Below are positions 15,506 through 44,783 of a stretch of 64,000 nt of DNA, piece after piece. The translations under genes were made by a program, and so were the position numbers. Location: positions 186,001 through 250,000 of IMG/VR virus record IMGVR_UViG_3300027708_000012; one strand, given 5' to 3'. Numbering within the stretch: the first letter of the stretch is position 1; each line of letters starts with the position of its first letter. Under the pieces are notes generated by a model. It had not been told where the DNA came from. It saw only the letters and a program-made list of their open reading frames with translations, and searched no databases.

Positions 15506-15506
<1 letters not shown>
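14994..15506 (-). CDS. Short fibre/adaptor protein with T4 gp10-like N-terminal motif
   Basis: VGASANDKAGDAIRTAFIKCNNNFDELY; NIWYDDQSGRLFVYY module. Confidence 0.7.
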
Positions 15507-27535
<12,029 letters not shown>

Positions 27536-30994: not shown

Positions 30995-32467
30995 TTATTG
31001 ATTAGAAATCATTCCAAAGCCTAGCCATTGACCAGGAGTTCCAGGAGTTATGCAAACCCAACCAATGTAGCTACTTGCTTTTGGCTCAGAATTCCAACAC
31101 ATATCTCCAGCATTGAATATGCCAGATGTTGGAGCAGTTTTTCCTGATGTAAATCTACGCCCTCCTAAACTAACATCTCCGTTAACACTAAATTGTAATG
31201 TAGGATCTGGATTATTAATGTTAATGCTCAAAGGTCCGAAAACTTTAACTGGTTTAGCTTGTATAAGTTTATCACCAATATTGATTTCGTTGATATCGCC
31301 GTAAAGCACTTCACTATTTTGACTAGTTAATTTAATTTGATTTTCAGAATTGATACCATTTTGAACTAATTTGATTCCTTCACCGATGGTTATTTGATTT
31401 GCTGTTAAATCATTTAATGTAGTTGTGCCGTCTACTGACAATGTTTTCAATGTTCCCAGTGTAGTTAAACTACTAGTTGTAACTCCGGCGCCCAAGGCTG
31501 TTGAACTTAAGACAGGTCTTGAATCGATATAATAAAATTTACCTGCGGCTATATCAAAACTTTCTGTAGAATGTAATCTATCTGGAGAATTAGACATTAT
31601 TAGCTGTCTTGGCGCACCCGCTCCTGCCCAAACTAAACCAAGACCATATATGCTATTATCCTTTGTTGCTAAGAATTGCAATGCATGTGTACGATCAATT
31701 CTGCTATCAGTAACTACACTAGTGGCGTTTAACGTTCCATAGACGTTTAATACCGCGCCTCCGTTCGCTGGGTTGCCTATATTAACTTCGCCACCTTTTG
31801 TAACAGTAATACGCTCTAGTCCGTCAGAAATGATAGCAATATCGTCGCTACTGTTTGTTCCAAAGTGTGCTATTCCGTTATTAGGACTACCAATAACAAT
31901 GTTAACATTATTGTCTAATATATCAATTGTAAAGTTTGGTTCTTCTGTGCCTATACCTAGTCGATTAAATGTACTATTAACAAACATAAAATCGCCTAGA
32001 GTAGTATCTCCAGCGACTGACAGTTTATTCAGTGTTCCAAGACTAGTTAAATTACTCTTTGTAATAGTTCCGCCTAGTGCTGTTGCACTAATCACTGGAA
32101 TATTATCAATATTGTAGGTGTTAGAAGAGCCAATATCTAAATTGGCATTGGCCCATAATCTTCCACCAGATCTATATATTAGCTGAGTTTGCCCTGTTGC
32201 ATGAGACCAACTAAAACCTTTGCCATTTAATTCAGAATCTACGGTAGAAACCCAACTACCTAAGTCTGTGGAATTATTATCTGCAATTAAATTCTTAACT
32301 TTAAGTGTTCCTACATTAAGGGTACCACCAATAGTTGCATCATTTGCTATGCTAACATTGCCGGTAATACTGTAATTGCCGGTATGTGTTACTAACCCTT
32401 GAGTCGCACTCAGTGTTAGACTACTAATAAAAACGGTATTGTCTTCAATATGAAATATTTGGGCCAT
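30995..32467 (-). CDS. Putative virion fibre/spike protein
   Basis: Two SxLTxLGTLxxLSV repeats; RLGIGTEEP; C-terminal GDMCWNSEP...GWVC...W module; late motif upstream. Confidence 0.7.
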   Translation of the reverse strand: MAQIFHIEDNTVFISSLTLSATQGLVTHTGNYSITGNVSIANDATIGGTLNVGTLKVKNLIADNNSTDLGSWVSTVDSELNGKGFSWSHATGQTQLIYRSGGRLWANANLDIGSSNTYNIDNIPVISATALGGTITKSNLTSLGTLNKLSVAGDTTLGDFMFVNSTFNRLGIGTEEPNFTIDILDNNVNIVIGSPNNGIAHFGTNSSDDIAIISDGLERITVTKGGEVNIGNPANGGAVLNVYGTLNATSVVTDSRIDRTHALQFLATKDNSIYGLGLVWAGAGAPRQLIMSNSPDRLHSTESFDIAAGKFYYIDSRPVLSSTALGAGVTTSSLTTLGTLKTLSVDGTTTLNDLTANQITIGEGIKLVQNGINSENQIKLTSQNSEVLYGDINEINIGDKLIQAKPVKVFGPLSININNPDPTLQFSVNGDVSLGGRRFTSGKTAPTSGIFNAGDMCWNSEPKASSYIGWVCITPGTPGQWLGFGMISNQ

Positions 32468-32512: not shown

Positions 32513-33700
32513 TTACTGAACTTTAAGAAGAATAGTATCTTCGTTAATGCGTCCGTTCATTTTAGTGTCTGTAGCATTGATCTCTTCTAGGAATTTGCGC
32601 AGAGCAATCTTACCTGCAGACTTAAACTCTTTGAGTTTTTCTTCAGGTTTACGCACAGTCTTTTGTACACTCTTAAACTCATCAAAGCCCGTAATTGTAG
32701 TACCTTTAACACTTAATGTATTAAACTCTGCAGCCACATACTTGCCCAACTTACGAGATTTAGTGTTAAACACCCAAAGTTCGCCAGACCCAATAATATC
32801 CTTTGGATTAATACTTACAAGTTTTAGAGGTTCGTTAGACTTCATAAACTTGAGTTTAGCAACCAGCTTTTCAACGGGCACTGATTTCTTAGCACGAGGA
32901 GCACGATTAACTTTGGCTTCTTGTGCCAACATATCACACGCACTCGCAATTTCTTGATAAAATGCAATCAGATTGCGGATTTGCTTTTTAGTACGATGAC
33001 TATATGCTTCCTTCAATTGTTCATCGCCTTTACCGCTAGCAAGTTCCTCAAGTTCTGCCAAATCTCGTGCATACAACTCTTTAATAATTCGAGCATGCGC
33101 AGCCTTAACTTCTTTGCCTTTTAGCAAGTTGAGCATTTTAAATGCTTTAGGATCAAAATTCTCAGGATCTGTTTGGAAATTTTCAATGGCATCTTCAATT
33201 TCTTCGGTCATGCGATACGATGCTTCACGCACACGTTCTTGAATGGTAGGCTGTGCTACTACAGGTTTAGTATCGACAACTTCATCTTCCTTGTCGTTTT
33301 TGCCTGCTTCAATTACTTCGACAATTGCTTTACGCAACCAAGCACTTGTATCTCGACCATCATTAAAATCTTCACGAACGGCAGGCATGCCGCGATTCAA
33401 ACAACTAGCAATAGCACCCATTGTGACATTGCATCGATTATCTTTAGTTTTCTTAAAGGCAGCAATGTCTTCTTTTGTACAACCAACATTAGTCATCCAT
33501 TTGATAATAGCTGGCTTCAAATCTTTGCCGCTAAATTCCAAACGGTAATATTCCATAGCACCATGCCAATGGCGCAAAAATTGGTTAGCATCCATGGACT
33601 CTACATTATCCCATACGGGACTATAATCTTTAGCCGCTTTGGTGCGATGTGCTGTAACTTGTTTTTTAGTTACACGGGTTTTGGTTGCTACTTTAGCCAT
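32513..33700 (-). CDS. Hypothetical phage protein
   Basis: 395-aa ORF from MAKVATK (GGAG RBS); own sigma70 promoter. Confidence 0.8.
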   Translation of the reverse strand: MAKVATKTRVTKKQVTAHRTKAAKDYSPVWDNVESMDANQFLRHWHGAMEYYRLEFSGKDLKPAIIKWMTNVGCTKEDIAAFKKTKDNRCNVTMGAIASCLNRGMPAVREDFNDGRDTSAWLRKAIVEVIEAGKNDKEDEVVDTKPVVAQPTIQERVREASYRMTEEIEDAIENFQTDPENFDPKAFKMLNLLKGKEVKAAHARIIKELYARDLAELEELASGKGDEQLKEAYSHRTKKQIRNLIAFYQEIASACDMLAQEAKVNRAPRAKKSVPVEKLVAKLKFMKSNEPLKLVSINPKDIIGSGELWVFNTKSRKLGKYVAAEFNTLSVKGTTITGFDEFKSVQKTVRKPEEKLKEFKSAGKIALRKFLEEINATDTKMNGRINEDTILLKVQ

Positions 33701-33732
33701 TTTTTGCTCCTGCTTTGTTAAACAATACACAT

Positions 33733-33766: not shown

Positions 33767-34633
33767 TCAAAATAATATTTCCCTTGCCTCACTGGACGAT
33801 GCTACGTTACCACCCAATAGCTTTATAATATCTGCAGCCATTTTAACTAATTCGGCGTTAGTCTTTGCCAAAACACCTTTACTAGTATAGATATTATCTT
33901 CCATACCAACACGTACATGCCCGCCTAATATCATAGTTTGGGCTACCATTGGCATTTCTTGTTTACCTATACCAAATGCGCTCCATACACTTCCTTTTGG
34001 TAGTTCATTGTAAGCATACATCAGTGCATTAGGAGTTGCATTCCATCCATATTTGATACCCATAGCAAATTGCCAAAATGGAGTTCCTTTGATTGTTCCG
34101 TCTGCCACAAATTCCTGTGCTATACGAAAATCTCCGCTATCAAAAATTTCTAATTCACACTTTGTTCCTGCCTGCTGTACAAGATCTACCATCCTCCTAG
34201 TTATTAACTTATGATTAATACGTATACCATTTTCGGCTTGATGCATAGTATTAAAATCTATGCTGCACAAGTCAGGTTTAATTAATTCAATATGCTTAAC
34301 TCTGTCAATAGCATGAAGCAATACCGTCCCCGGTGCTCCGTGTGATAAGTTATCTTTGCTTGGAATATACAATGCTCCAGGACCTGTTGTTAAATTAATC
34401 AACACATTGGTATTATGTTTTTTAATTCTATCAACAGTATCTCGGTATAAATCTACATCCATACTAGGCCGAGTTGTTTCTGGATTACGTACATGGATAT
34501 GTACAATGGCTGCTCCCGCTTCTGCAGCCTCTAATGCACTTATAGCAATCTCTTCAGGTGTTACTGGCAGATAGGGAGTTTGTTCTCTATTAGTAACAGC
34601 ACCGGTGATGGCACAAGTGATAATAGTTTTCAT
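33767..34633 (-). CDS. Beta-keto acid cleavage enzyme (BKACE/Kce, DUF849 family)
   Basis: IITCAITGA, LPVTPEEIA, AGAAIVHIHVR, ELEIFD, GGHVRVGMEDN; start moved to 34633. Confidence 0.92.
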   Translation of the reverse strand: MKTIITCAITGAVTNREQTPYLPVTPEEIAISALEAAEAGAAIVHIHVRNPETTRPSMDVDLYRDTVDRIKKHNTNVLINLTTGPGALYIPSKDNLSHGAPGTVLLHAIDRVKHIELIKPDLCSIDFNTMHQAENGIRINHKLITRRMVDLVQQAGTKCELEIFDSGDFRIAQEFVADGTIKGTPFWQFAMGIKYGWNATPNALMYAYNELPKGSVWSAFGIGKQEMPMVAQTMILGGHVRVGMEDNIYTSKGVLAKTNAELVKMAADIIKLLGGNVASSSEAREILF

Positions 34634-35379
34634 ACAGTTCTTCCACCGTCCACTAAAAATATACTGCCTGTGGCAAATCGTATGTGTGTACAACACGCTT
34701 CAATAGTACTAGCAATATCATCTGCATACCCAATACGCTTTAACGGACTGGATTCTGCCATCTTTTCGTTAACACCTGGACCTTTAACAGCACCACTAGT
34801 TGGCTCTACCATAAAACCGGGAGACACCGCTACAATACGAATTTCAGGAGCAAGTGCTTTTGCCAAAGTTTTAGTCAGTTGATTGATTCCAGCTTTGCTA
34901 CAACCGTATGCTATATTGCTATTACTTGCACCTTCAGCACTGGTACTGGAAATATTAACTATTAATCCATCTTTGGTTTCTTTAAGCATAGGAGCAAATG
35001 CACGTATTGTAGCAAATACTCCACGCAGGTTAGTTGTTACAATACTATCAAATATTTCATCTGTGAGCGCATCCAAATTTGAAGGCAACACATTTTTTGT
35101 AATGCTTGCACTGTTAACTAAAATATCACAACGACCAAACTGTTTTTTGATCATTGCAGCCGCCAATGTCAAATCAGCTGAATTGGTAATATCTGCTAAA
35201 ATTGCTGTGCCAGATAGTGCTTGCATTTTTTGCATGGCACTATCTATATCTTTTCGAACCAGTGCTACTACTGTGGCTCCTTGCTGTGACAATCGTTGGG
35301 CGGTAGCATAACCCACTTGTCCGCATCCGCCTGTTATGACAGCAACTTGACCTTGGAGATTATTCAATCGTTGGAACAT
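34630..35379 (-). CDS. Short-chain dehydrogenase/reductase
   Basis: ITGGCGQVG, LVNSA, NISS, YGCSK. Confidence 0.92.
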   Translation of the reverse strand: MFQRLNNLQGQVAVITGGCGQVGYATAQRLSQQGATVVALVRKDIDSAMQKMQALSGTAILADITNSADLTLAAAMIKKQFGRCDILVNSASITKNVLPSNLDALTDEIFDSIVTTNLRGVFATIRAFAPMLKETKDGLIVNISSTSAEGASNSNIAYGCSKAGINQLTKTLAKALAPEIRIVAVSPGFMVEPTSGAVKGPGVNEKMAESSPLKRIGYADDIASTIEACCTHIRFATGSIFLVDGGRTV

Positions 35380-35409
35380 ATTACAAGTCCGTTAAATTAA
35401 TATTTTTAT

Positions 35410-36741
35410 TCACAATGTATATATCCGCGCTTGTTCGATCAGTTTATTTTTATCAATCTTATTAACGCCAGTAAGAGGCATAGAATCTAAAATCCAAATT
35501 TTACGCGGACATTCATTGTAAGACAATGTTTTCAAAATATGTGTTTTGATTTCATCTTCTGTTGTATTATTTTTAATAGTTACAAATGCATAAGGTTTAA
35601 CACCTTTTATATCGTCCTCTAAAGGAATAACCGCCGACTCTACTATACAAGGGTGTGTTTCTAATATAGTTTCAATCTTCCTAGGATATATGTTATTGCC
35701 ACCGCTGACAAACATATCATCGGCACGTCCCACAAAATAATAAAAACCTGCGGCATCTGTTTCAAATATATCATTAGTGATAAAATATCCATCTTTTGTA
35801 AATCTAGTGTCCCCATTACTATAACTAGTCATCATAGACGGACTTTTGATTTCTAATATTCCATTGTCTAGTCTATAATCTATTCCTGTAGCCGGATACC
35901 CTACACTCATTTCAGGAGTGGGTAACCACGGATGTTTACTAAACAACCCAGGACCTGCTTCTGTACTACCATATGCTATTGATATGGATATACTAGGAAA
36001 TTTTTGTTTAATAAAACTATATAAAGTTTTGCTAACTGGAGCACTAGCCATGGCAATATGTCTAATGGTCGTAAGTTTAGAAACGTCTTCTTGTAATAAC
36101 AAAGCAATCATAGTAGGAACTGAAGTTATAAAATTGACCTTGTGTTGTTTAATAACTTCTACAGCAGATTTAGCTTCAAATTGACTCATTAGTATTATTG
36201 TAGCATTGCCAGCTAGTCCTACTTCTAGATTAGATAACCCATTCATGTGATAGCAAGGAGCTGCTATTAGCATACGTTTTTTAGGCATTAATGGATCCTT
36301 AGCTTTTTGACTTATAGTCCATAGACGTTTATGAGGTATTACTACGCCCTTTGGCATTTTTGTAGAGCCAGATGTGTAAAGTATAATAGCAGGAGAATTT
36401 TCATCCATGCTAATTTTATCTGGGGTACCTATTTTAAAAAAATTAAAAAAGTTGTCTTCTGTTAGTACGAGTTCACATTGACTATCTTTTATAATGTACT
36501 CACGAACTGTTTGAGGTAGTTTAGTGCTGATTAAAACTGCAGTTGCACCTGCCCGTAGTATACCTAAATAGGCCGCCACAAAATTAATAGAATTATTTGC
36601 TAGTATTCCAACACGTTTATACCCAGAAAGTCCTACAGTAAAGCCGTTGGCTAAGTTGTCGAGCTCAGTATAGCTATACTCTCTATCGGTTATTATTGCT
36701 GTTTTTTCTGACGGTTTAAAAAGATAACCTAAATTATACAT
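35410..36741 (-). CDS. Acyl-CoA synthetase / AMP-binding ligase
   Basis: LYTSGSTKMPKG, AYGSTE, FITND, GRADDMFVSGGNNIYP, GVNKIDK. Confidence 0.92.
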   Translation of the reverse strand: MYNLGYLFKPSEKTAIITDREYSYTELDNLANGFTVGLSGYKRVGILANNSINFVAAYLGILRAGATAVLISTKLPQTVREYIIKDSQCELVLTEDNFFNFFKIGTPDKISMDENSPAIILYTSGSTKMPKGVVIPHKRLWTISQKAKDPLMPKKRMLIAAPCYHMNGLSNLEVGLAGNATIILMSQFEAKSAVEVIKQHKVNFITSVPTMIALLLQEDVSKLTTIRHIAMASAPVSKTLYSFIKQKFPSISISIAYGSTEAGPGLFSKHPWLPTPEMSVGYPATGIDYRLDNGILEIKSPSMMTSYSNGDTRFTKDGYFITNDIFETDAAGFYYFVGRADDMFVSGGNNIYPRKIETILETHPCIVESAVIPLEDDIKGVKPYAFVTIKNNTTEDEIKTHILKTLSYNECPRKIWILDSMPLTGVNKIDKNKLIEQARIYTL

Positions 36742-36760
36742 TCAATGATCCTGTTTAAGT

Positions 36761-36789
36761 ATGTTATATATTCAAATAAGAAAAGTCAA
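36761..36789 (-). promoter_or_regulatory. Sigma70-type promoter of the ligase-SDR-BKACE operon
   Basis: TTGACT, 17 nt, TAACAT. Confidence 0.55.
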
Positions 36790-36839
36790 TAATTTTTTTA
36801 AGAAATATGCAACCCTATAAATATGTCACAAGGAAAATT

Positions 36840-37883
36840 ATGGACTTTACACCTGGAAAACCAATTAGAACTTATGCAGAAAATGGTGCATGGCGTGATT
36901 GGAGTACTGATGAATTGGTTGGGGACAAGCTAAACTTCTTACCAAATTGGAAATGTGGCGCAGGCGTTGACAGTCTATATGTTGATATGGATGGATACGT
37001 TTGGACAGCCAGTTGTCGTGTAGGCGGCAAATTAGGAAATGTATTTGAAGACTTTCGTGTGCCCGATGATTGGATTGATTGCAAACGTAATGTTTGTAGT
37101 TGCGGCGCCGACCTCTTTATTCCAAAAGTTAATAAAATTGAATTTAAACCATTACTTCGTAGAGGTGCTGGGTTAGAAACTGAAATTGAGCTACGTGATG
37201 ATACCCTAACTGATTTTGTTGCTATGGAAAGAACTCATGCAAGTAATCAAAAACAAGTTTATTGGGAAATAGGTCGTCGTTGCAATTATGATTGTAGTTA
37301 TTGCTGGCCGTGGATACACAATAATACCGATCCGCACAAATCGCTAGAAGAACTAATGAAAGCTACAGCACTGATAGAAGAGAAATTCACCAAAGGTGAA
37401 GCAGCTAACTTTATCATTAGCGGCGGCGAGCCAACGGTTAATAAAGATTTCTTAGACTGGTTGCGTTATCTAAACGCCATGGGACATCATGTTAGTTTGC
37501 ATAGTAACGGAAGTCGTTTACCGGACTACTACAGAGAAATCATACACTATGGTGATTTAAATTTAAGTGTACATTTTGAATTTTATGATCGTGCAAAGTT
37601 CGTTCGTGTAGTAGAAGCTATTGCAGACGAAAAAGCCAATAACGGTGGGTTAGGTCATCTGGAAATAAAATTCATGATGGCACCACATAATAGAGAAGAA
37701 ACATTAAGTTTAGAAGAAGAACTCAAAACTCTTCCGAATTTTATAGACTTTTGTACTTGGGCAGTAGTACCTATCCGTGGCGGCTTAGATAATAAAAATA
37801 GTAAGCCAAATTCAACTAGCGGAAGCGAAGTTATGGAGGGTTACACAAAGGAAGACTATATTTTGTTTGGAGACAGAAAGTGA
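36840..37883 (+). CDS. Radical SAM protein with N-terminal SPASM/twitch-like Cys domain
   Basis: CNYDCSYC, ISGGEPT, HSNGSR; N-terminal WKCGAG...C...C...CSC; start moved to MDFTP after TATAAATA (36816-36823) and the RBS. Confidence 0.85.
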   Translation: MDFTPGKPIRTYAENGAWRDWSTDELVGDKLNFLPNWKCGAGVDSLYVDMDGYVWTASCRVGGKLGNVFEDFRVPDDWIDCKRNVCSCGADLFIPKVNKIEFKPLLRRGAGLETEIELRDDTLTDFVAMERTHASNQKQVYWEIGRRCNYDCSYCWPWIHNNTDPHKSLEELMKATALIEEKFTKGEAANFIISGGEPTVNKDFLDWLRYLNAMGHHVSLHSNGSRLPDYYREIIHYGDLNLSVHFEFYDRAKFVRVVEAIADEKANNGGLGHLEIKFMMAPHNREETLSLEEELKTLPNFIDFCTWAVVPIRGGLDNKNSKPNSTSGSEVMEGYTKEDYILFGDRK

Positions 37884-38788
37884 ATCACATTGTAACAGTT
37901 ACTTGTGACAGAGACTTTGACATGATGTTGATGCAAGCACAGAGTATTGATAAATTTTTATTAGATAGATCCACACACTGGGTTGTAATACAAACTTCTA
38001 GTAAACCAATACAAGAATGGGTCGATGCATTAAGTCCGTATTATACCGGGCCTTGCCAGTTGCGGTTTTTTGATACACGCTCTTATAAGAAGACACTGAG
38101 TGAAAATCTACTAACACCCGGGCATAAAAATTGGATTGATCAGCAGATGTTAAAATTATTAATTGTTGATCGCATTGATAGTGATTCCTACTTGGTATTG
38201 GATACTAAAAATTTCTTCATCAAGCCAACTAGGTTATCTGAATCTCCTCAACATGAGGGGAATGCTTTTATAGATGAGAGACAGAAACAATATCGATACT
38301 GGCCCGATTGGATAGAATTATTAGAAAATATAACTGGTAAAAAACCAACACATTTTTGGGAACCAACAACTCCCTTTCGAATGAAAACATCAATCGTAAA
38401 AGAAATACTAAACAATCATCCTAAGCTAGAATTACTTTTTGATTATGTTCACAATGGACTTACAATTCCAGCAGGAATAAGTGAATTTATATTGTATAGA
38501 TTTTATAGTAATTTTGATTTTAATACATCTGTTAAATCTTTTTCATTTACTTTTTGGGGAAATTATACAATAGAAATGTTTAGATCGTGCCTTACTGACA
38601 ATAACATTAAAATCATAGGATTTCATAGATTTTTTATACGAGATCAATCTGATGACTGTATTTCTGAAATTCAAAAATCTTTAATAGAAATAGGATTTGA
38701 CAATAATATTGTTAACAGAGTATTTGATAAAAAGTATTGGGCAATAAATGTAAACAATCACAGTAAATTAAACCAGCCTCAGCATTAA
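37880..38788 (+). CDS. Glycosyltransferase-like protein (DUF6492-like)
   Basis: QQMLKL, YLVLDTKNFF, SEFILY pattern. Confidence 0.5.
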   Translation: MNHIVTVTCDRDFDMMLMQAQSIDKFLLDRSTHWVVIQTSSKPIQEWVDALSPYYTGPCQLRFFDTRSYKKTLSENLLTPGHKNWIDQQMLKLLIVDRIDSDSYLVLDTKNFFIKPTRLSESPQHEGNAFIDERQKQYRYWPDWIELLENITGKKPTHFWEPTTPFRMKTSIVKEILNNHPKLELLFDYVHNGLTIPAGISEFILYRFYSNFDFNTSVKSFSFTFWGNYTIEMFRSCLTDNNIKIIGFHRFFIRDQSDDCISEIQKSLIEIGFDNNIVNRVFDKKYWAINVNNHSKLNQPQH

Positions 38789-39399
38789 ATTTTTTCTAAC
38801 ATTACATCACAATACATTTCGTTTTGTAATGCCATACCAGTTATCTTCCAACCCTCTTTTACACACAACCAATTTACTACTTCTACGGTCCCGTAATCTT
38901 CTTTATTTCTATGATCGTACATCATATAATCGTTATAAATTAGTTTTCCTCCGGGCGATAGCTTTGCTTGGGCAGCTTTGGTATCTTTCCAAATACCTTT
39001 TAATGAATGATCCCCGTCTATATAGATCAAATCATAAGTGCCTTTGTATTTGTGTAAATTAGTAGAACTATCTCCTTCAAATATCTGCAAATCTACGGTG
39101 TCACCAAATTTATTTTTTAGTCGATTGTAATAAAAATCACTGTGTGTTGACCCATTAAATTTTTCAATGGCAGGTATTCCATTAAATGAAACATTTGCAT
39201 TATGTAGTTTAAATATATCATATGCTCCGAATATTTTAGGTGTCAATGTTTCTATCATATATTCGGAAAAATCACCATAAGCAACACCTAACTCGGCAAT
39301 AGATTTTATGCCAGATCCTACTAGGTTATCAATAAGGTTACGCCTGTGAGCAAAAAGTTTAGCATCTTTCAAATGTTCTGGTTGTAATGGTAAGGGCAT
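38785..39399 (-). CDS. Class I SAM-dependent methyltransferase (Methyltransf_24-like)
   Basis: ELGVAYGDFS, DLIYIDGDHS, LSPGGKLIYNDY. Confidence 0.85.
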   Translation of the reverse strand: MPLPLQPEHLKDAKLFAHRRNLIDNLVGSGIKSIAELGVAYGDFSEYMIETLTPKIFGAYDIFKLHNANVSFNGIPAIEKFNGSTHSDFYYNRLKNKFGDTVDLQIFEGDSSTNLHKYKGTYDLIYIDGDHSLKGIWKDTKAAQAKLSPGGKLIYNDYMMYDHRNKEDYGTVEVVNWLCVKEGWKITGMALQNEMYCDVMLEKI

Positions 39400-39401
39400 G
39401 A

Positions 39402-40112
39402 TTATCTAATATAAGTGTCATCTTTTAATGATTGTATAAAACTTTTAAGCTCTACAGCGTTAGCTACTTTATCCCATAGCTGTTCAGTTTTTCTCTTTTT
39501 TAGTTGATCATTTATTTTCCCGCGATATATTGGACGTTGTATGTATTCAAATAGTTCTGCTACTATATTTTCATAGTGTATAGTAGTGTAAGTTATATCT
39601 AGCGATTTCAACCAATTATCAAAATTCTTATTTTGTTCGTATAACCAAGCCATTTCTTCAAAGTGATGTATTTCTAAATCATCGGGTAAGTCAGATGCTG
39701 TAAATTCGTGCCACACACCTGTGGATAATGCTAGTCCGTAACTTAGTATTTGAGCTTCTATATCTTGTCTTTTTAACACTACAAATTCTATATTACATTT
39801 TTCTATTCTTTTAATAATTTCTTTATGATTAGGGATATTACTGTAAGGAAAAAATCTTACCACAAGTGATTGATTTTTGTCACCATTCTCTAATGCTAAT
39901 AGCACATTTTCAACACGTTCTTCTATAGAAATTGAGCTAGTATCATCGTAATAGTTAAGAGTGTTATCATCGTTTATTTTTACTCTAGTTTCTAAATTAT
40001 GAGTAAATGGCTCGTATAGGTTTGCCATGTTACGAGTTGAACTTTCAAGCAGTGTGGCCAGTAATTGACTACCACTACGCGGTAACCCTAAAATGCAAAA
40101 TCTCTTTTTCAT
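39402..40112 (-). CDS. Sulfotransferase-like protein (Stf0/P-loop type)
   Basis: ILGLPRSGSQLL 5'-PSB loop, LYEPF, LKRQDIEAQILS, IHYE. Confidence 0.7.
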   Translation of the reverse strand: MKKRFCILGLPRSGSQLLATLLESSTRNMANLYEPFTHNLETRVKINDDNTLNYYDDTSSISIEERVENVLLALENGDKNQSLVVRFFPYSNIPNHKEIIKRIEKCNIEFVVLKRQDIEAQILSYGLALSTGVWHEFTASDLPDDLEIHHFEEMAWLYEQNKNFDNWLKSLDITYTTIHYENIVAELFEYIQRPIYRGKINDQLKKRKTEQLWDKVANAVELKSFIQSLKDDTYIR

Positions 40113-41059
40113 TACTTTTCCTTAGTACTCATAATATCAAAATTACAATGACACATATTTTTGCTACACACTATTGGCTCAGTTGGGAGAGTTAAATCTA
40201 CGTCGTTTATTTTACCAACAGCACCACCCTCTTTACACCATCCTCGATAAATTGAACCATCCATATCAACAATCAATTGCTCAATACCAGCATAGCATTT
40301 CCAGCCAGACCAGTCATTGATTTTTTCGCTAATGAACCTATGCGCACTTGATACTTGGCTAGTACCGTCAGGATATACTACACGCATAGCACCTCTGTAA
40401 TAATCAAATGTCTTGGTAAATTTAATATGTTTACTGATTAATTCGTGTTGCTTATCAAATATTCTCTTTTGAAAATCATTATAATCATAGAGTGTATCAC
40501 CAAAGTCGTGGATCAATGGCTGCAAGGCCATACTAATATTGCCTAAATTTTTAATTTTATTTGCTACAGCATAACAATGATCAAACTTTTCAGGACTCAT
40601 CATTATGTTAACGTGAGTGCGTACATCGTTGTTTAATAATTTAACTACGTCAATAAAGTGTTTATCGTCAGCATGCTCTGGATGAAAGCTAAGACATACA
40701 TGATCAAAGTATTGTTTATTTTCTTCCCAGTATCTTAGTGTGCGTGATCCATTACTGATTAAACCAACTTTGACACCCATCTCAGAACAAAATTGACAAA
40801 TTTCAATAAAATGTTTATACATTGTGACTTCACCACCAGTGAATTCAAAATATATTTTTTTATGAAAATATTGATCTTTTACACGAGCAATGAAATTTTT
40901 AATTACGCTAGGATCAGGCCAATACTTTGATCCATCGTGCAGTGCTGAAGGACAATACGAGCAACTATAGTTACAGGTATTGCCCAAGCACCAATTGACT
41001 ACAAACCAATCTTCGTGCGAATTGTTTGAATGTTCTAACCGTATATATTTGTGTTCCAT
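40112..41059 (-). CDS. Radical SAM protein with C-terminal SPASM/twitch-like domain
   Basis: CNYSCSYC, FTGGEVT, ISNGSR; C-terminal WKCYAG...C...C...CHC. Confidence 0.88.
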   Translation of the reverse strand: MEHKYIRLEHSNNSHEDWFVVNWCLGNTCNYSCSYCPSALHDGSKYWPDPSVIKNFIARVKDQYFHKKIYFEFTGGEVTMYKHFIEICQFCSEMGVKVGLISNGSRTLRYWEENKQYFDHVCLSFHPEHADDKHFIDVVKLLNNDVRTHVNIMMSPEKFDHCYAVANKIKNLGNISMALQPLIHDFGDTLYDYNDFQKRIFDKQHELISKHIKFTKTFDYYRGAMRVVYPDGTSQVSSAHRFISEKINDWSGWKCYAGIEQLIVDMDGSIYRGWCKEGGAVGKINDVDLTLPTEPIVCSKNMCHCNFDIMSTKEK

Positions 41060-41086
41060 GGAAAACCTTATAATATACTAGTTATC

Positions 41087-41926
41087 TCAAGTCCATAGTG
41101 CGTCTCTAATTTTAATAAGTCGAATCATCATATCGGTATCTTCTTTTTCATATGCCGCTTCAATCTTTTGAAGCAACTTATGCGCCTTGTCGCTAGCCTT
41201 TTTAACAGCAGGATCTTTTTCCTGCCCCCAATTTAGCTTGCCACCATTGGCAATACGACTTGCTTCACAGGCCGCAGTCCAACCACTGGCTTCGTATGGA
41301 TCGGGTCGGTTACGATAGGTCACAGTCCACCAATTGTAAAGTTCTTTGATTTCCTTGGCACGTAGTGCTTGACCAGTTGGTTTGCCATAGTCAGGATGTT
41401 CGGGCCCACACCAGTCGTTATTAGTTAGTGTCATGGCCCAGTCTAAGTGATCAAGGCCTGCTTGCGGACAACGCCATGTACGCCAGCGGAACCAACCTGT
41501 GGCCCAGAATGGTGCATTATATTTGGCTTTATCTTTTTCATCACCCCAGGCAATGTGACTCCATGCTTGTTCTACTTCAACAAAGTCAACAAGTTCATTA
41601 AACAAACATGGCAAGAATCGATTCCCAACATCGCACCAGTTGCCAGGACGAATATCGCGAACATGAGCAGTAAGACTATGAGTCCGAGTAACCCACCGAT
41701 TATTAATATAATACTTGATATCATAGAGTTTCCTTACAGGCCAAGTTACAAAATCTTGTAGATGGCCGAGCCCTTCTTCTGCTAGCCAGTAACGGAAATT
41801 GTGTTTCATTTGAGCTGTGGTTGTCCAGTCGTCCCATTCTTCGGCTGTTCCTGCACTCAATTTCTTAGTACCTCGGATCCAGTCTGCGAAAGGAGTACAA
41901 CTCCAGTAGTTAGTGTGATGTGCCAT
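41087..41926 (-). CDS. Trp-rich hypothetical phage protein
   Basis: Long ORF; likely start MAHHTNYW. Confidence 0.75.
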   Translation of the reverse strand: MAHHTNYWSCTPFADWIRGTKKLSAGTAEEWDDWTTTAQMKHNFRYWLAEEGLGHLQDFVTWPVRKLYDIKYYINNRWVTRTHSLTAHVRDIRPGNWCDVGNRFLPCLFNELVDFVEVEQAWSHIAWGDEKDKAKYNAPFWATGWFRWRTWRCPQAGLDHLDWAMTLTNNDWCGPEHPDYGKPTGQALRAKEIKELYNWWTVTYRNRPDPYEASGWTAACEASRIANGGKLNWGQEKDPAVKKASDKAHKLLQKIEAAYEKEDTDMMIRLIKIRDALWT

Positions 41927-41927
41927 T

Positions 41928-42674
41928 TTATTTTTTAAACCCAAACGGGCATTTACTTTCGTATTTGTTTATGAGATTCTTTGTCGTTCCGTACTTATTA
42001 AGAAACGACGTAGGAATTAAACGCTCTCTTTTGTTCATAAACTCTTCTTCGCTGAGTTTATGCACATGTACTTTTACACTCCTATCATCCATTGGTACAA
42101 TATTAACCATAGGAGTTCCTTCTTTAATCAAAAGATTTTCTCGAAGATTTTGAAAACTAAAAAACATGTTAATATCAGTTGTGGAATTATATTTGTAATT
42201 AACTACACCTGGGGGTATGATAAAATTTCCCGGATTTCTAAATCCCCATGTATTCTGAACCCACATCCAGTTGATATTTTCCTTGCATTCAATTAACCAC
42301 GGAGTTTGAATTTTTAAATGTGAATATTCATTCGGGTTTAAATAGCCTTCCATCTGTCTAAAGGCATGATGGCCAGCGGCTGATATACCATCAGCAAACT
42401 GTAAACCAAACTGGCGATTAACCGTCAATCCAATCGCCATCTCACTCCATAAAGGAATGGTAATTCCGTTGTTAAAAAACTGATTAAATCCTGTACAACC
42501 TTTAATAGTTGACTGTGGGAATATACCCGACTCATCTGGATAGCTTTTATCCAACACCTTCCACCAATCGGGGAAAAATTTGTTAGTATTATCAATCGGA
42601 TAAAAGTCGTGAACATACTGTCTGCCGGTAAAGCAGTCTACATTAATAGTATTAGACTTAAACCAAAACATCAT
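41928..42674 (-). CDS. Hypothetical protein (beta-rich)
   Basis: 248-aa ORF coupled to neighbours. Confidence 0.7.
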   Translation of the reverse strand: MMFWFKSNTINVDCFTGRQYVHDFYPIDNTNKFFPDWWKVLDKSYPDESGIFPQSTIKGCTGFNQFFNNGITIPLWSEMAIGLTVNRQFGLQFADGISAAGHHAFRQMEGYLNPNEYSHLKIQTPWLIECKENINWMWVQNTWGFRNPGNFIIPPGVVNYKYNSTTDINMFFSFQNLRENLLIKEGTPMVNIVPMDDRSVKVHVHKLSEEEFMNKRERLIPTSFLNKYGTTKNLINKYESKCPFGFKK

Positions 42675-43257: not shown

Positions 43258-43461
43258 TCAGGCCATCCTGTCTATATTTTGTCCTACGGCACAGTTCATT
43301 CGTCGTGCCATCTCAATGCGCTTTTGTTCGTTAACTTCTTTGTCGTACTTGATTCGTCGTTCTTCTAAAACTAATTCTTCGTGACGCTTGTCTATTTTTC
43401 TAATTTCAGATTGCTGATACAATTTGAGATTTTGTGCTGTAACACTAGTAATTGCTGTCAT
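43258..43461 (-). CDS. Hypothetical coiled-coil protein
   Basis: 67-aa ORF overlapping the ligase stop. Confidence 0.6.
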   Translation of the reverse strand: MTAITSVTAQNLKLYQQSEIRKIDKRHEELVLEERRIKYDKEVNEQKRIEMARRMNCAVGQNIDRMA

Positions 43462-44783
43462 AACTTTTCTCCAATTTCAAAACCTCTAAAACCCTTAAAT
43501 CTTGGAAAACGTAAACTATATGTACCGTCTTGGTTTTGTGTAATAGCATCCGCTCTTACTTCGACAATGTTTCCAAGCACGTTTGCACGGTTATTCCAAT
43601 AATCATCACGATTACTATCAGTAAAACCGGATCCAACGTTGACACGTATTGCTTTACCGTCATCAACACCTTCGCACACAAATGCACCAAGTTTACCAAT
43701 ATTTTTTCCTGTACCTTCTTCAACATTTACAACCTCCAATGATACTTCAATGAAAGGCTTCAACTTCAGCCATGCAACACTACGTTTACATTCATAAGGA
43801 GCTTCTGGATCTTTAATCATAATGCCTTCGTACCCACCAAGTACAGCTTGTTGATTAATTTCTTTAAATCTTGCATATCCTTCTGGTGTTTCCAAATCAA
43901 CAAGTTCGTTGGCAACATAAGTTACATTAGGCAACATGTCTTGATTCTGCTCAACCCAAAACTTAACCATGCTACTGCGAGTAGTTTGATCTTTGTTGTA
44001 GATACCTTTCTCAAAATCTTCTAATGGCAACACATCAAACAAGTTAAGCACGGCATCTCCTGCTTCTATATTGTCCTTACGGTGTACTTGCTTCATCAAA
44101 TCTTGAAAACTACTAGACATAATTTCTCCATCTAGCACTAAGTCCATACTTTTACTGGAGCCTTTTAGTTGGACCACGTTTGAAATTTGTTGTGCTATGT
44201 GAGGGAAATTAGCAAGTTCTTTACCATTGCGACTGAACATGTCCACCCGACCATCAGCACGAACGATAGTGATAACACGGACACCGTCAAGTTTAACTTC
44301 GATAAGTTTCTTGCCGGCGACTTTAGTTTCATGATTAGCACTATCATGAGCAAGCTGACAACCAAATACGGGAATAGCATAGTCAGCATATTTCTTCTCC
44401 ACTACTTTGTTAATTGTTTTTTCGCTTACACCACAGCGCAAGTCTTTGATTAAAATTCTACGATACCAACCATTCCATTCTTTTTTGGTAGCTGACTTCA
44501 TCATGGCCTGAATCATATCACGTGCTGTATTGCCGGTGACATTGCGAGTAACAAGGCCAGTAAGAGCGAGAGTAAAACTATCCCAAGGTAAGCCAGGGCC
44601 ATCTTCATCTGTTTTCTCCGGAATTTGTTTAAGTCCAAACGTAATCATTGGATCAAGTGCAAGACGACAACCGTGAAAGAATTCGTCATTTCCTTCTTGG
44701 GCAATAGCTTCAATAATTGCTTCTTTGTTCAAACGACTTGGATGACTTTCTAAAGCCCAGATATGACTTGCGCAAACACTCAT
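43458..44783 (-). CDS. lig: ATP-dependent DNA ligase
   Basis: EVKLDGVR, LDGEI, YEGIMIK, WLKLK, VGSGF, SLRFPRF. Confidence 0.95.
   Translation of the reverse strand: MSVCASHIWALESHPSRLNKEAIIEAIAQEGNDEFFHGCRLALDPMITFGLKQIPEKTDEDGPGLPWDSFTLALTGLVTRNVTGNTARDMIQAMMKSATKKEWNGWYRRILIKDLRCGVSEKTINKVVEKKYADYAIPVFGCQLAHDSANHETKVAGKKLIEVKLDGVRVITIVRADGRVDMFSRNGKELANFPHIAQQISNVVQLKGSSKSMDLVLDGEIMSSSFQDLMKQVHRKDNIEAGDAVLNLFDVLPLEDFEKGIYNKDQTTRSSMVKFWVEQNQDMLPNVTYVANELVDLETPEGYARFKEINQQAVLGGYEGIMIKDPEAPYECKRSVAWLKLKPFIEVSLEVVNVEEGTGKNIGKLGAFVCEGVDDGKAIRVNVGSGFTDSNRDDYWNNRANVLGNIVEVRADAITQNQDGTYSLRFPRFKGFRGFEIGEKL

What the first reader, a model, noticed from the sequence alone, without database searches (positions are those of the whole stretch)
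36840..41059. Circularly permuted pair of radical SAM/SPASM enzymes facing each other
Seen: 40112-41059 has the radical SAM core first (CNYSCSYC), then WKCYAGIEQLIVDMDGSIYRGWCKEGGAVGKI...CSKNMCHC. 36840-37883 has the homologous Cys domain first (WKCGAGVDSLYVDMDGYVWTASCRVGGKLGNV...CKRNVCSC), then the core (CNYDCSYC). Established: SPASM/twitch domains normally lie C-terminal to the TIM barrel. Inference: domain permutation after duplication, or heterodimer partners acting on one substrate.
Basis: seen in the sequence. Interest (0 to 1): 0.66.

Follow-up and report, generated by a model that had tools for sequence, protein, structure and literature searches.

The report
Circularly permuted radical SAM enzyme pair
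A jumbo phage carries two related iron-sulfur "radical SAM" enzymes, one of which has its cysteine-rich auxiliary domain moved from the tail end to the front; this rearranged form is a large, uncatalogued family that travels with its normal partner in phages and in Bdellovibrionota bacteria.

Summary
ORF A (36840-37883, +) reads Cys domain, then radical SAM core. ORF B (40112-41059, -) reads core, then Cys domain. Both halves are homologous in swapped order: cores E 4e-18, Cys domains E 2e-15.

- **Domain type.** The Cys domain has five invariant Cys (C-x19-C-x21/22-C-x4-C-x-C). It is twitch-like, not a full SPASM. The B model aligns end to end with the twitch enzymes BlsE and SkfB; the A model aligns to them only by its core.
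- **Family.** A is not a one-off. The word search gave 848 relatives, and the best 120 all have the same length and architecture.
- **Origin.** On a core tree the permuted proteins form one split, consistent with a single origin. Tandem fusions exist (R-T-R-T, and R-T-degenerate r-T), as the duplication-and-truncation route predicts.
- **Pairing.** A and B co-occur in all six larger phage records tested. In Bdellovibrionota genomes they lie adjacent on one strand, in the order B then A.
- **Precedent.** An N-terminal twitch is already catalogued (NCBIfam NF033640, whose paralogs sit in the same islands). A is not a member of it.
- **Heterodimer.** The complex prediction gives only weak support (0.37 against 0.00 for controls).
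- **Function.** Context suggests sugar or glycan tailoring: a sulfotransferase neighbour and a GT2 fusion. This is inferred, not shown.

Verdict: a new variant of a known kind.

The parts
36840..37883 (+). ORF A, 347 aa: the permuted radical SAM enzyme (twitch-like Cys domain, then linker, then radical SAM core). The open frame starts at 36807, but relatives start at 36840.
36840..37139 (+). A residues 1-100: N-terminal twitch-like domain with invariant C39, C59, C81, C86 and C88. It is homologous to B residues 216-315.
   Evidence: The predicted secondary-structure order matches B's domain.
37140..37214 (+). A residues 101-125: poorly conserved linker with lower model confidence, joining the twitch-like domain to the core. 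It has no counterpart in B.
   Evidence: consensus with many variable positions; pLDDT roughly 61-83 per 10-residue block
37215..37883 (+). A residues 126-347: radical SAM core. It carries CX3CX2C at 37281-37304, a GGE motif (SGGEP) and SNG. It is homologous to B residues 5 to about 205.
40112..41059 (-). ORF B, 315 aa: canonical order, radical SAM core then C-terminal twitch-like domain.
40415..41059 (-). B residues 1-215: radical SAM core (CX3CX2C at 40952-40975, minus strand) plus the linker region.
40115..40414 (-). B residues 216-315: C-terminal twitch-like domain with invariant C255, C275, C298, C303 and C305.
37880..38788 (+). DUF6492 protein. Its frame overlaps the end of A by 4 bases, so it is probably co-translated with A.
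38785..39399 (-). Class I SAM methyltransferase (Methyltransf_24), last gene of the minus-strand run that includes B.
39402..40112 (-). Stf0-like sulfotransferase. Its start overlaps the stop of B by one base. It is B's neighbour in 9 of the 10 related phage loci in which B lies within the fetched flank.
33767..36741 (-). BKACE, SDR and AMP-dependent ligase cassette, transcribed divergently from A. It is present only in the two loci identical to the window and absent from a locus whose A is 96% identical. It is an accessory cassette, not a core part of the pair.

Best explanation
ORF A is a circular permutant of a B-type radical SAM enzyme.

The parental type (B) has a partial TIM-barrel core that binds the SAM-cleaving [4Fe-4S] cluster. 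This is followed by a C-terminal twitch-like domain whose five conserved Cys probably hold one auxiliary [4Fe-4S] cluster.

In A the same domain, together with the two strands and helix that precede it (B 216-315), has become the N-terminus. A new linker of about 25-30 residues follows, then the core (B 5 to about 205).

The most likely route is tandem duplication of a B-type gene, in-frame fusion to R-T-R-T, and loss of the outer R and T. This happened once, and it gave rise to a large family.

Both proteins keep every motif needed for SAM cleavage, so both are probably active two-cluster enzymes. They are kept together as a pair in hypervariable multi-radical-SAM islands of freshwater jumbo phages and of Bdellovibrionota. 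They most likely carry out two radical steps on one carbohydrate-type substrate in a glycan or sugar tailoring pathway, possibly as a heterodimer.

- **Shown:** homology of both halves in swapped order; conservation of the architecture; one split in the tree; existence of tandem fusions; co-occurrence and adjacency.
- **Inferred:** the auxiliary cluster; the direction and route of the permutation; the sugar substrate; any physical complex.
For: **Permutation**
- Two significant BLASTP segments in swapped order.
- Near-gapless alignment of the Cys domains with 15 invariant columns, five of them Cys.
- Core profiles match at 99.1% probability.
- The same order of secondary-structure elements is predicted in both Cys domains.
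- The B model aligns over its whole length to twitch enzymes: BlsE Z 16.2, rmsd 3.7, 270 aligned, model 16-315; SkfB Z 14.8; PqqE; MoaA.
- The A model aligns to BlsE only by its core, 135-347 with chain 18-227, Z 11.5.

**A real, conserved family**
- 848 relatives in the word search; the best 120 are 346-380 aa, with 96-99% coverage.
- All Cys are invariant.

**Single origin**
- All 31 T-R rows form one side of a branch in the core tree (SH-aLRT 94).
- The domain tree also needs only one change.
- Every T-R representative scores higher with the A-core profile than with the B-core profile.

**Route**
- Among the best 150 representatives of 1307 clusters there are 67 R-T, 14 T-R, 10 R-T-T and 1 R-T-R-T.
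- The R-T-T proteins are about 650 aa. The second half of P0252 aligns to B profile positions 89-304 at probability 97.
- The 813-aa R-T-R-T is a single ORF.

**Pairing**
- A and B are both present within about 10 kb in 5 of 5 larger related phage records, and in the window's own record.
- In at least 11 of 19 Bdellovibrionota loci, B and A are adjacent on one strand in the order B then A, with the two frames abutting or overlapping.

**Sugar link**
- B is translationally coupled to an Stf0-like sulfotransferase, which is its neighbour in 9 of 10 loci.
- One A-type protein is fused to GT2 glycosyltransferase domains inside a GT2 cluster.
- B's best structural match is the nucleoside-sugar decarboxylase BlsE.

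**Complex**
- Score 0.37, best of three controls 0.00. This is a weak pass: the mark was reached by 58 of 80 solved complexes and 2 of 110 mismatched pairs, but a score of 0.60 or under was seen in only 7 of those 80. The runs agree in at least 81% of contacts, and the partner's pLDDT is at least 87.
Against: - No biochemical evidence exists for cluster content or activity.
- The trees are unrooted. That R-T is ancestral rests on R-T being the rule in the wider SPASM/twitch superfamily.
- The observed tandem fusions show that the intermediate state occurs. They do not show that A descends from such a gene.
- In Bdellovibrionota the gene order B then A reads R-T | T-R, which is not itself the R-T-R-T intermediate.
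- The match between A's C-terminal tail and B 193-201 is not significant, so the exact breakpoint is approximate.
- The sugar assignment is contextual only. The Bdellovibrionota loci show no recognisable sugar genes next to the pair, and in many phage loci the neighbours are simply more radical SAM genes.
- The complex prediction is weak and was run with my own shallow alignments.
Confidence: 0.8

Rival explanations
1. A is simply a member of the already catalogued N-terminal twitch family (NCBIfam NF033640, N_Twi_rSAM). If so, there was no separate permutation event and nothing is new.
For: NF033640 members do have a SPASM/twitch domain before the core: Pfam SPASM at res 7-76, Radical_SAM at 116-281. 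They sit in the same islands as A and B in related phages and in Bdellovibrionota. The first hairpin of the A/B domain aligns weakly to that of NF033640 (E 0.0068).
Against: A scores 31 bits against a cut-off of 170, and only through the core (model positions 107-225). BLASTP of A or B against a bona fide member finds nothing. The domain profiles match at only 5.7% probability. The Cys patterns differ: C...CC...CxxC against C-x19-C-x21-C-x4-C-x-C. A's two halves are each far closer to B.
Confidence: 0.05
2. A and B form an obligate heterodimer. The mirrored domain order lets the two auxiliary-cluster domains and two active sites face one substrate, or lets each twitch domain serve the other's core.
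For: Co-occurrence in 6 of 6 phage records and direct adjacency on one strand in Bdellovibrionota. The complex prediction passes weakly: 0.37 against a best control of 0.00. That mark was reached by 58 of 80 solved complexes and 2 of 110 mismatches; the runs share at least 81% of contacts and the partner's pLDDT is at least 87.
Against: A pass at 0.60 or under is, by the tool's own calibration, more often wrong than right unless the guess was likely beforehand. One of the three runs scored 0.14. In the window the two genes lie in different transcription units on opposite strands. Each monomer model is confident on its own (pTM 0.81 and 0.78). I know of no solved twitch radical SAM enzyme that needs a paralogous partner.
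Confidence: 0.25
3. A and B are peptide (RiPP) maturases, like many SPASM/twitch radical SAM enzymes, rather than sugar-tailoring enzymes.
For: Structural neighbours include SkfB, EpeE, SuiB, CteB and PqqE. The multi-radical-SAM islands resemble some RiPP clusters. The Bdellovibrionota loci lack recognisable sugar genes.
Against: No RRE/PqqD-like domain is found in A or B. There is no room for a precursor ORF beside either gene in the window: the gaps are 65 and 27 bases. The neighbours are a sulfotransferase, a methyltransferase and DUF6492, and in relatives a carbamoyltransferase, a cytidylyltransferase-cupin and a GT2 fusion. The best structural match of B is BlsE, a nucleoside-sugar enzyme.
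Confidence: 0.15
4. The N-terminal Cys domain of A is an annotation or assembly artefact: a piece of a neighbouring gene fused by a frameshift or misassembly.
For: None found.
Against: It is one uninterrupted frame. Identical DNA occurs on two other IMG/VR contigs (L004, L005), and there are 49 related viral loci. The word search gave 848 relatives, the best 120 of constant length. The same architecture is found in cellular genomes on contigs up to 1.9 Mb. The upstream gene is on the other strand.
Confidence: 0.01

Closest known systems
Twitch-domain radical SAM enzymes (BlsE, SkfB, BtrN, MoaA)
   Same: B has the same layout: a radical SAM core, then a short C-terminal Cys domain with a hairpin between the first two Cys. 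The B model aligns end to end with BlsE (Z 16.2), SkfB (Z 14.8) and MoaA (Z 14.3). The A and B cores keep CX3CX2C, GGE and SNG.
   Different: Sequence identity is only 11-16%. The Cys spacing (C-x19-C-x21/22-C-x4-C-x-C, five Cys) is their own. In A the domain is N-terminal, so A aligns to these structures only by its core.
NCBIfam NF033640, N_Twi_rSAM (twitch domain-containing radical SAM protein)
   Same: It is the only catalogued family I found with a SPASM/twitch domain before the core. Its paralogs lie in the same islands as A and B.
   Different: A fails its cut-off (31 against 170 bits). It has no pairwise similarity to members, and its Cys domain is homologous to B's C-terminal domain rather than to the N_Twi domain. 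I found no paper describing the N-terminal architecture.
NCBIfam NF038073, STM4011 family radical SAM protein
   Same: It is the nearest named family for the Cys domain. A res 49-99 and B's C-terminus both match model positions of about 200-268 of 278, and B's core matches positions 11-157. The family has the canonical R-T order.
   Different: Both score far below the cut-off of 200 bits (B 55, A 29.6), so they are relatives, not members. As far as I know, no function is known for this family either.
Prokaryotic viperins (pVip; NF038283)
   Same: This is the best-scoring named model for both cores, and a top Foldseek hit for A.
   Different: The match covers only the first half of the core (about 90-110 residues) and is far below the cut-off (49-61 against 180 bits). 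By my recollection, viperins carry no twitch-type auxiliary-cluster domain.

Membership tests
Radical SAM superfamily (PF04055) | CX3CX2C motif for the SAM-binding [4Fe-4S] cluster, with a Pfam score over the gathering threshold | tested here: met
   A has CNYDCSYC and scores 61.3 bits; B has CNYSCSYC and scores 43.7 bits; the cut-off is 29.5. The motif is invariant in 120 + 120 relatives.
Radical SAM superfamily (PF04055) | SAM-binding motifs (GGE, and a ribose motif on the following strand) and a partial TIM-barrel fold | tested here: met
   Invariant SGGEP and HSNGS in A, and TGGE and SNG in B. The models align to solved radical SAM cores at Z 11-16.
SPASM domain (PF13186 / TIGR04085) | Seven-Cys motif CX9-15GX4C-gap-CX2CX5CX3C-gap-C binding two auxiliary clusters | tested here: not met
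   Only five conserved Cys, spaced C-x19-C-x21/22-C-x4-C-x-C. No Pfam SPASM hit at E <= 0.01.
Twitch domain (truncated SPASM, one auxiliary cluster) | A short Cys domain with a beta-hairpin between the first two Cys, followed by a helix, packed on the barrel | tested here: met
   For B, the whole model including res 216-315 aligns to BlsE, SkfB and MoaA. For A, the domain is homologous to B's (E 2e-15) with the same predicted order of elements. A's domain was not folded and searched on its own.
Twitch domain (truncated SPASM, one auxiliary cluster) | Position C-terminal to the radical SAM core | tested here: not met
   Met for B. Not met for A, where the domain occupies res 1-100 and the core res 126-347.
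Twitch domain (truncated SPASM, one auxiliary cluster) | Actually binds an auxiliary [4Fe-4S] cluster | not testable with these tools
   Needs reconstitution with iron/sulfide analysis, EPR or Mossbauer spectroscopy.
NCBIfam NF033640 N_Twi_rSAM | Full-length match at or above 170 bits, including the N-terminal twitch (model positions 1-106) | tested here: not met
   A scores 31.3 bits, over model positions 107-225 only. True members in related loci score 188-322 bits.
NCBIfam NF038073 rSAM_STM4011 | Full-length match at or above 200 bits | tested here: not met
   B scores 55 bits. A scores 29.6 bits, through its Cys domain only.
Viperin (NF038283 / PADLOC pVip) | Full-length match at or above 180 bits, including the C-terminal nucleotide-binding extension | tested here: not met
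   A scores 48.6 and B 60.8 bits, over the first 90-110 core residues only.
Circular permutation of a protein | Two segments each homologous to the partner, in swapped order, within one conserved ORF | tested here: met
   The structural alignments behave as expected for a permutant.
Circular permutation of a protein | Same three-dimensional arrangement of the two parts in both proteins | tested here: inconclusive
   Both models are confident overall (pTM 0.81 and 0.78), but no coordinates or non-sequential superposition were available to compare how the domains dock.

The most novel reading that the evidence does not exclude
A and B are the two halves of an obligate heterodimeric radical SAM machine. 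The mirrored order (R-T with T-R) creates a pseudo-symmetric pair of auxiliary clusters around one carbohydrate substrate. This machine is the conserved heart of a large, undescribed multi-radical-SAM glycan-tailoring pathway shared between Bdellovibrionota and jumbo phages that may infect them.
Probability: 0.12. Interest if true: 0.8.

Novelty: new variant of a known kind. Interest (0 to 1): 0.55.

Why it matters
- **Enzymology.** In the described members of the SPASM/twitch class, the auxiliary-cluster domain follows the core. Here a natural, abundant and apparently functional family has it in front, and its unpermuted sister is encoded nearby. That gives a matched pair for asking what chain topology contributes to cluster placement, electron transfer and substrate access.
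- **Independent rearrangement.** It is a second lineage with this layout, separate from the only catalogued N-terminal twitch family. The rearrangement therefore probably arose at least twice.
- **Protein evolution.** The data contain the parent, the tandem fusions and the permutant. That is a textbook-quality case of permutation by duplication.
- **An uncharacterised pathway.** The pair marks hypervariable islands that hold up to about eight radical SAM genes, in jumbo phages and in predatory Bdellovibrionota. The product of this chemistry is unknown.

Tried and rejected
- **Phage collection.** Megablast of 36000-42000 found no match. tblastn of A and B found only remote partial hits in a Streptomyces phage and a faecal contig. 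No named phage therefore carries the pair.
- **Literature.** Searches for N-terminal twitch, N-terminal SPASM, circular permutation with SPASM, and the NCBI product name found nothing on this architecture.
- **NF033640 membership of A.** Rejected.
- **Defence-system reading.** PADLOC gave only partial pVip matches to the first half of the core.
- **PDB sequence search.** The B profile found only generic core matches, E >= 3.8e-5.
- **Exact breakpoint.** hhalign of A's tail against B 165-225 was not significant.
- **Are the Bdellovibrionota contigs mis-binned phage?** The conserved phage protein next to A (phrog_11903) was not found in five of those genomes, which are 1.9-3.9 Mb. That result came without a positive control.
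- **ESM Atlas look-up of the DUF6492 neighbour.** It added nothing beyond the Pfam name.
- **Complex prediction.** It returned only weak support and is used only as such.

Full report
**Setting.** The window is bases 186001-250000 of a 345,369-base IMG/VR virus record that CheckV rates 94% complete, so it is a jumbo phage. No record in the phage collection matched either the DNA or the two proteins closely. The region of the finding lies between virion-type genes (phrog_6002 and tail-fibre-like genes at 30995-32467; phrog_11903 at 32513-33730) and an ATP-dependent DNA ligase at 43458-44783.

**The observation.** ORF A is open from 36807, but its relatives begin at the Met at 36840 and are 347 aa long. 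ORF B is 40112-41059 on the minus strand and is 315 aa.
- Pfam finds the radical SAM core at residues 154-263 of the 358-aa form of A and at residues 25-138 of B.
- BLASTP of A against B gives two independent significant segments in swapped order: core with core (29% identity, E 4e-18) and A10-107 with B216-313 (32% identity, E 2e-15).
- Family profiles of the cores match at 99.1% probability.
- Twenty Cys-domain segments, ten from each family, align over about 100 columns almost without gaps. There are 15 invariant columns, five of them Cys.

**What the Cys domain is.**
- Its Cys pattern is C-x19-C-x21/22-C-x4-C-x-C.
- It does not hit Pfam SPASM and lacks the seven-Cys SPASM motif.
- Its nearest named relative is the C-terminal part of the STM4011 family model, positions of about 200-268 of 278. 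Both proteins score far below that family's cut-off.
- AlphaFold models were built with family alignments: A has pLDDT 81.6 and pTM 0.81; B has pLDDT 76.2 and pTM 0.78. They predict the same order of elements in both domains: strand, strand, helix, strand, strand, strand, helix.
- The B model aligns over its whole length to twitch-type enzymes: BlsE Z 16.2 (rmsd 3.7, 270 residues, model 16-315 against chain 18-335), SkfB Z 14.8, PqqE Z 14.6 and MoaA Z 14.3.
- The A model aligns to the same structures only by residues 135-347, for example to BlsE residues 18-227 at Z 11.5. A sequential aligner should give exactly this for a permutant.

I therefore call the domain twitch-like, probably holding one auxiliary [4Fe-4S] cluster. 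The cluster itself is an inference.

**Anatomy of the permutation.**
- A residues 1-100 correspond to B 216-315.
- A residues 101-125 form a poorly conserved linker with lower model confidence and no counterpart in B.
- A residues 126-347 correspond to B 5 to about 205.
- The match of the last part of A's tail to B 193-201 is visible by eye but not significant, so the breakpoint is approximate.
- Both proteins keep CX3CX2C, the GGE motif and the SNG motif as invariant columns, so both look catalytically competent.

**A is a family, not an accident.**
- The word search found 848 relatives of A. The best 120 are 346-380 aa, 69-93% identical and cover 96-99% of the query.
- B has 612 relatives of 313-327 aa.
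- All eight Cys of A's two motifs and all eight of B's are invariant in these sets.
- A profile of the Cys domain, searched against 1.84 billion representatives, found 1307 clusters at E <= 0.001.
- Among the best 150, 67 have the order core-domain (R-T) and 14 have domain-core (T-R). Fifty-six show the domain alone; these are mostly short products and probably fragments. Ten are R-T-T proteins of about 650 aa, and one is R-T-R-T.
- Every T-R protein scores better with the A-core profile than with the B-core profile.
- On a maximum-likelihood tree of 129 cores, the 31 T-R rows form one side of a branch (one change, SH-aLRT 94). The short domain tree also needs one change, but without support.

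This is consistent with one permutation event. The direction, R-T to T-R, rests on R-T being the rule in the wider superfamily, because the trees are unrooted.

**The route.** Permutation by duplication predicts a tandem fusion as the intermediate, and such proteins exist.
- P0324 is one 813-aa ORF with two CX3CX2C cores and two Cys domains. It lies next to two more radical SAM genes.
- The second half of the roughly 650-aa protein P0252 aligns to B profile positions 89-304 at 97% probability. It is therefore a second B copy that has lost the start of its core.

This shows that the intermediate state is viable in nature. It does not show that A descends from such a gene.

**An N-terminal twitch is not unprecedented.** In related phage loci the space around A is filled with tandem paralogs of a 380-530 aa protein.
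- This protein hits NCBIfam NF033640 (N_Twi_rSAM) at 188-311 bits against a cut-off of 170. In the 398-aa member tested, Pfam finds SPASM at residues 7-76 and Radical_SAM at 116-281.
- A is not a member. It scores 31 bits, through the core only.
- BLASTP of A or B against a true member finds nothing.
- The two domain profiles match at 5.7% probability, aligning only the first hairpin.

A is therefore a second lineage with the domain in front, derived from a B-like parent. I found no paper on either architecture.

**The pair is conserved.**
- In the fetched flanks of 49 related viral loci, B lies within 8 kb of A in eleven.
- In five larger related records (112-525 kb), both are present within about 10 kb in all five, as in the window's own record.
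- A pattern scan of one genome per prokaryote species returned 19 loci, all from Bdellovibrionota MAGs on contigs up to 1.9 Mb.
- In at least eleven of these loci, B and A are adjacent on one strand in the order B then A, with the two frames abutting or overlapping. They are often flanked by one to five NF033640 paralogs.
- Five of these genomes are 1.9-3.9 Mb, and the phage's conserved phrog_11903 protein was not found in them, so they appear to be cellular.
- A full-length A-type gene was found in 9 of 201 sampled genomes of that phylum.

The scan's patterns came from the A and B families, so finding no other phyla is not evidence that they lack the pair.

**Do they bind each other?** The complex prediction gave a median score of 0.37 with a best control of 0.00. 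The tool calls this weak support.
- The mark was reached by 58 of 80 solved complexes and 2 of 110 mismatched pairs.
- Scores of 0.60 or under were seen in only 7 of those 80 solved complexes.
- The runs agree in at least 81% of contacts, the partner's pLDDT is at least 87, and one run scored 0.14.

Together with the conserved adjacency, I put a physical heterodimer at about one in four.

**Function.** This part is inferred.
- In the window, B's stop overlaps the start of an Stf0-like sulfotransferase, which is followed by a class I methyltransferase. A's end overlaps a DUF6492 gene.
- The sulfotransferase is B's neighbour in 9 of the 10 phage loci where B is in view.
- Other islands add B12-binding radical SAM proteins, a carbamoyltransferase and a cytidylyltransferase-cupin.
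- One A-type protein of 1516 aa is fused to GT2 glycosyltransferase domains and sits in a cluster of GT2 genes.
- B's best structural match is BlsE, which acts on a nucleoside-sugar.
- Neither protein has a peptide-recognition domain, and there is no room for a precursor ORF beside either gene.

I therefore favour two radical steps on a carbohydrate-type substrate in a glycan or sugar tailoring pathway (about 50%) over peptide maturation (about 15%). Against this, the Bdellovibrionota operons show no recognisable sugar genes.

**Verdict.**
- The label should be 'twitch-like' rather than SPASM.
- The statement that such domains lie C-terminal is the rule, but it has one catalogued exception, to which A does not belong.
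- This is a new variant of a known kind: an uncatalogued, abundant, circularly permuted twitch radical SAM family kept next to its unpermuted sister.
- No read-mapping tools, alternative genetic codes or restricted sequences were used.

Noticed in passing
L013, L014, L021, L028, L029, L032, L038, L040 (related phage loci); L064, L066, L068, L074 (Bdellovibrionota): The islands around A hold up to five or six tandem paralogs of bona fide NF033640 N-terminal-twitch radical SAM proteins. There are also 640-912 aa B12-binding radical SAM proteins, a DUF6071 protein, a carbamoyltransferase and a cytidylyltransferase-cupin. Some islands therefore carry about eight radical SAM genes. Their product is unknown.
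   Followed up: partly
L056-L074 (genome contigs): Every cellular hit of the Cys-domain scan is a Bdellovibrionota MAG (Bdellovibrionales, Pseudobdellovibrionaceae, Bacteriovoracaceae). This suggests gene exchange with that phylum, or that it is the host of these freshwater jumbo phages. The scan's patterns were family-specific, so other phyla are not excluded.
   Followed up: partly
window 33767-36741 (-): A cassette of BKACE, short-chain dehydrogenase and AMP-dependent ligase lies between phrog_11903 and A. It is present only in the identical loci L004 and L005. It is absent from L007, whose A is 96% identical, so it looks like a recent insertion.
   Followed up: partly
window 15506-27535 (-): A single open reading frame of 4009 aa sits among virion-type genes. 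It was not examined.
   Followed up: no
P0351 (556 aa): This protein has an A/B-type Cys domain at residues 3-101, then a Pfam SPASM domain at 142-209, then a radical SAM core at 257-445. It appears to carry two different auxiliary-type domains in front of one core.
   Followed up: no
G004:C1:84471-85394 (record of L029): A third, B-like paralog (31% identical to B over residues 13-314) lies about 25-35 kb from the A/B pair in one related phage record.
   Followed up: no
window 41087-41944 (-) and 41928-42674 (-): Two genes lie upstream of B in the same strand run: a Trp-rich 285-aa protein with no family hit, and a phrog_7084 protein of unknown function. Both are conserved only in the closest relatives.
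   Followed up: partly
L074:4945-6240 (+): A 431-aa Bdellovibrionales protein has a B-type core and a Cys domain separated by an unusually long linker. It sits on a long branch in the core tree.
   Followed up: no
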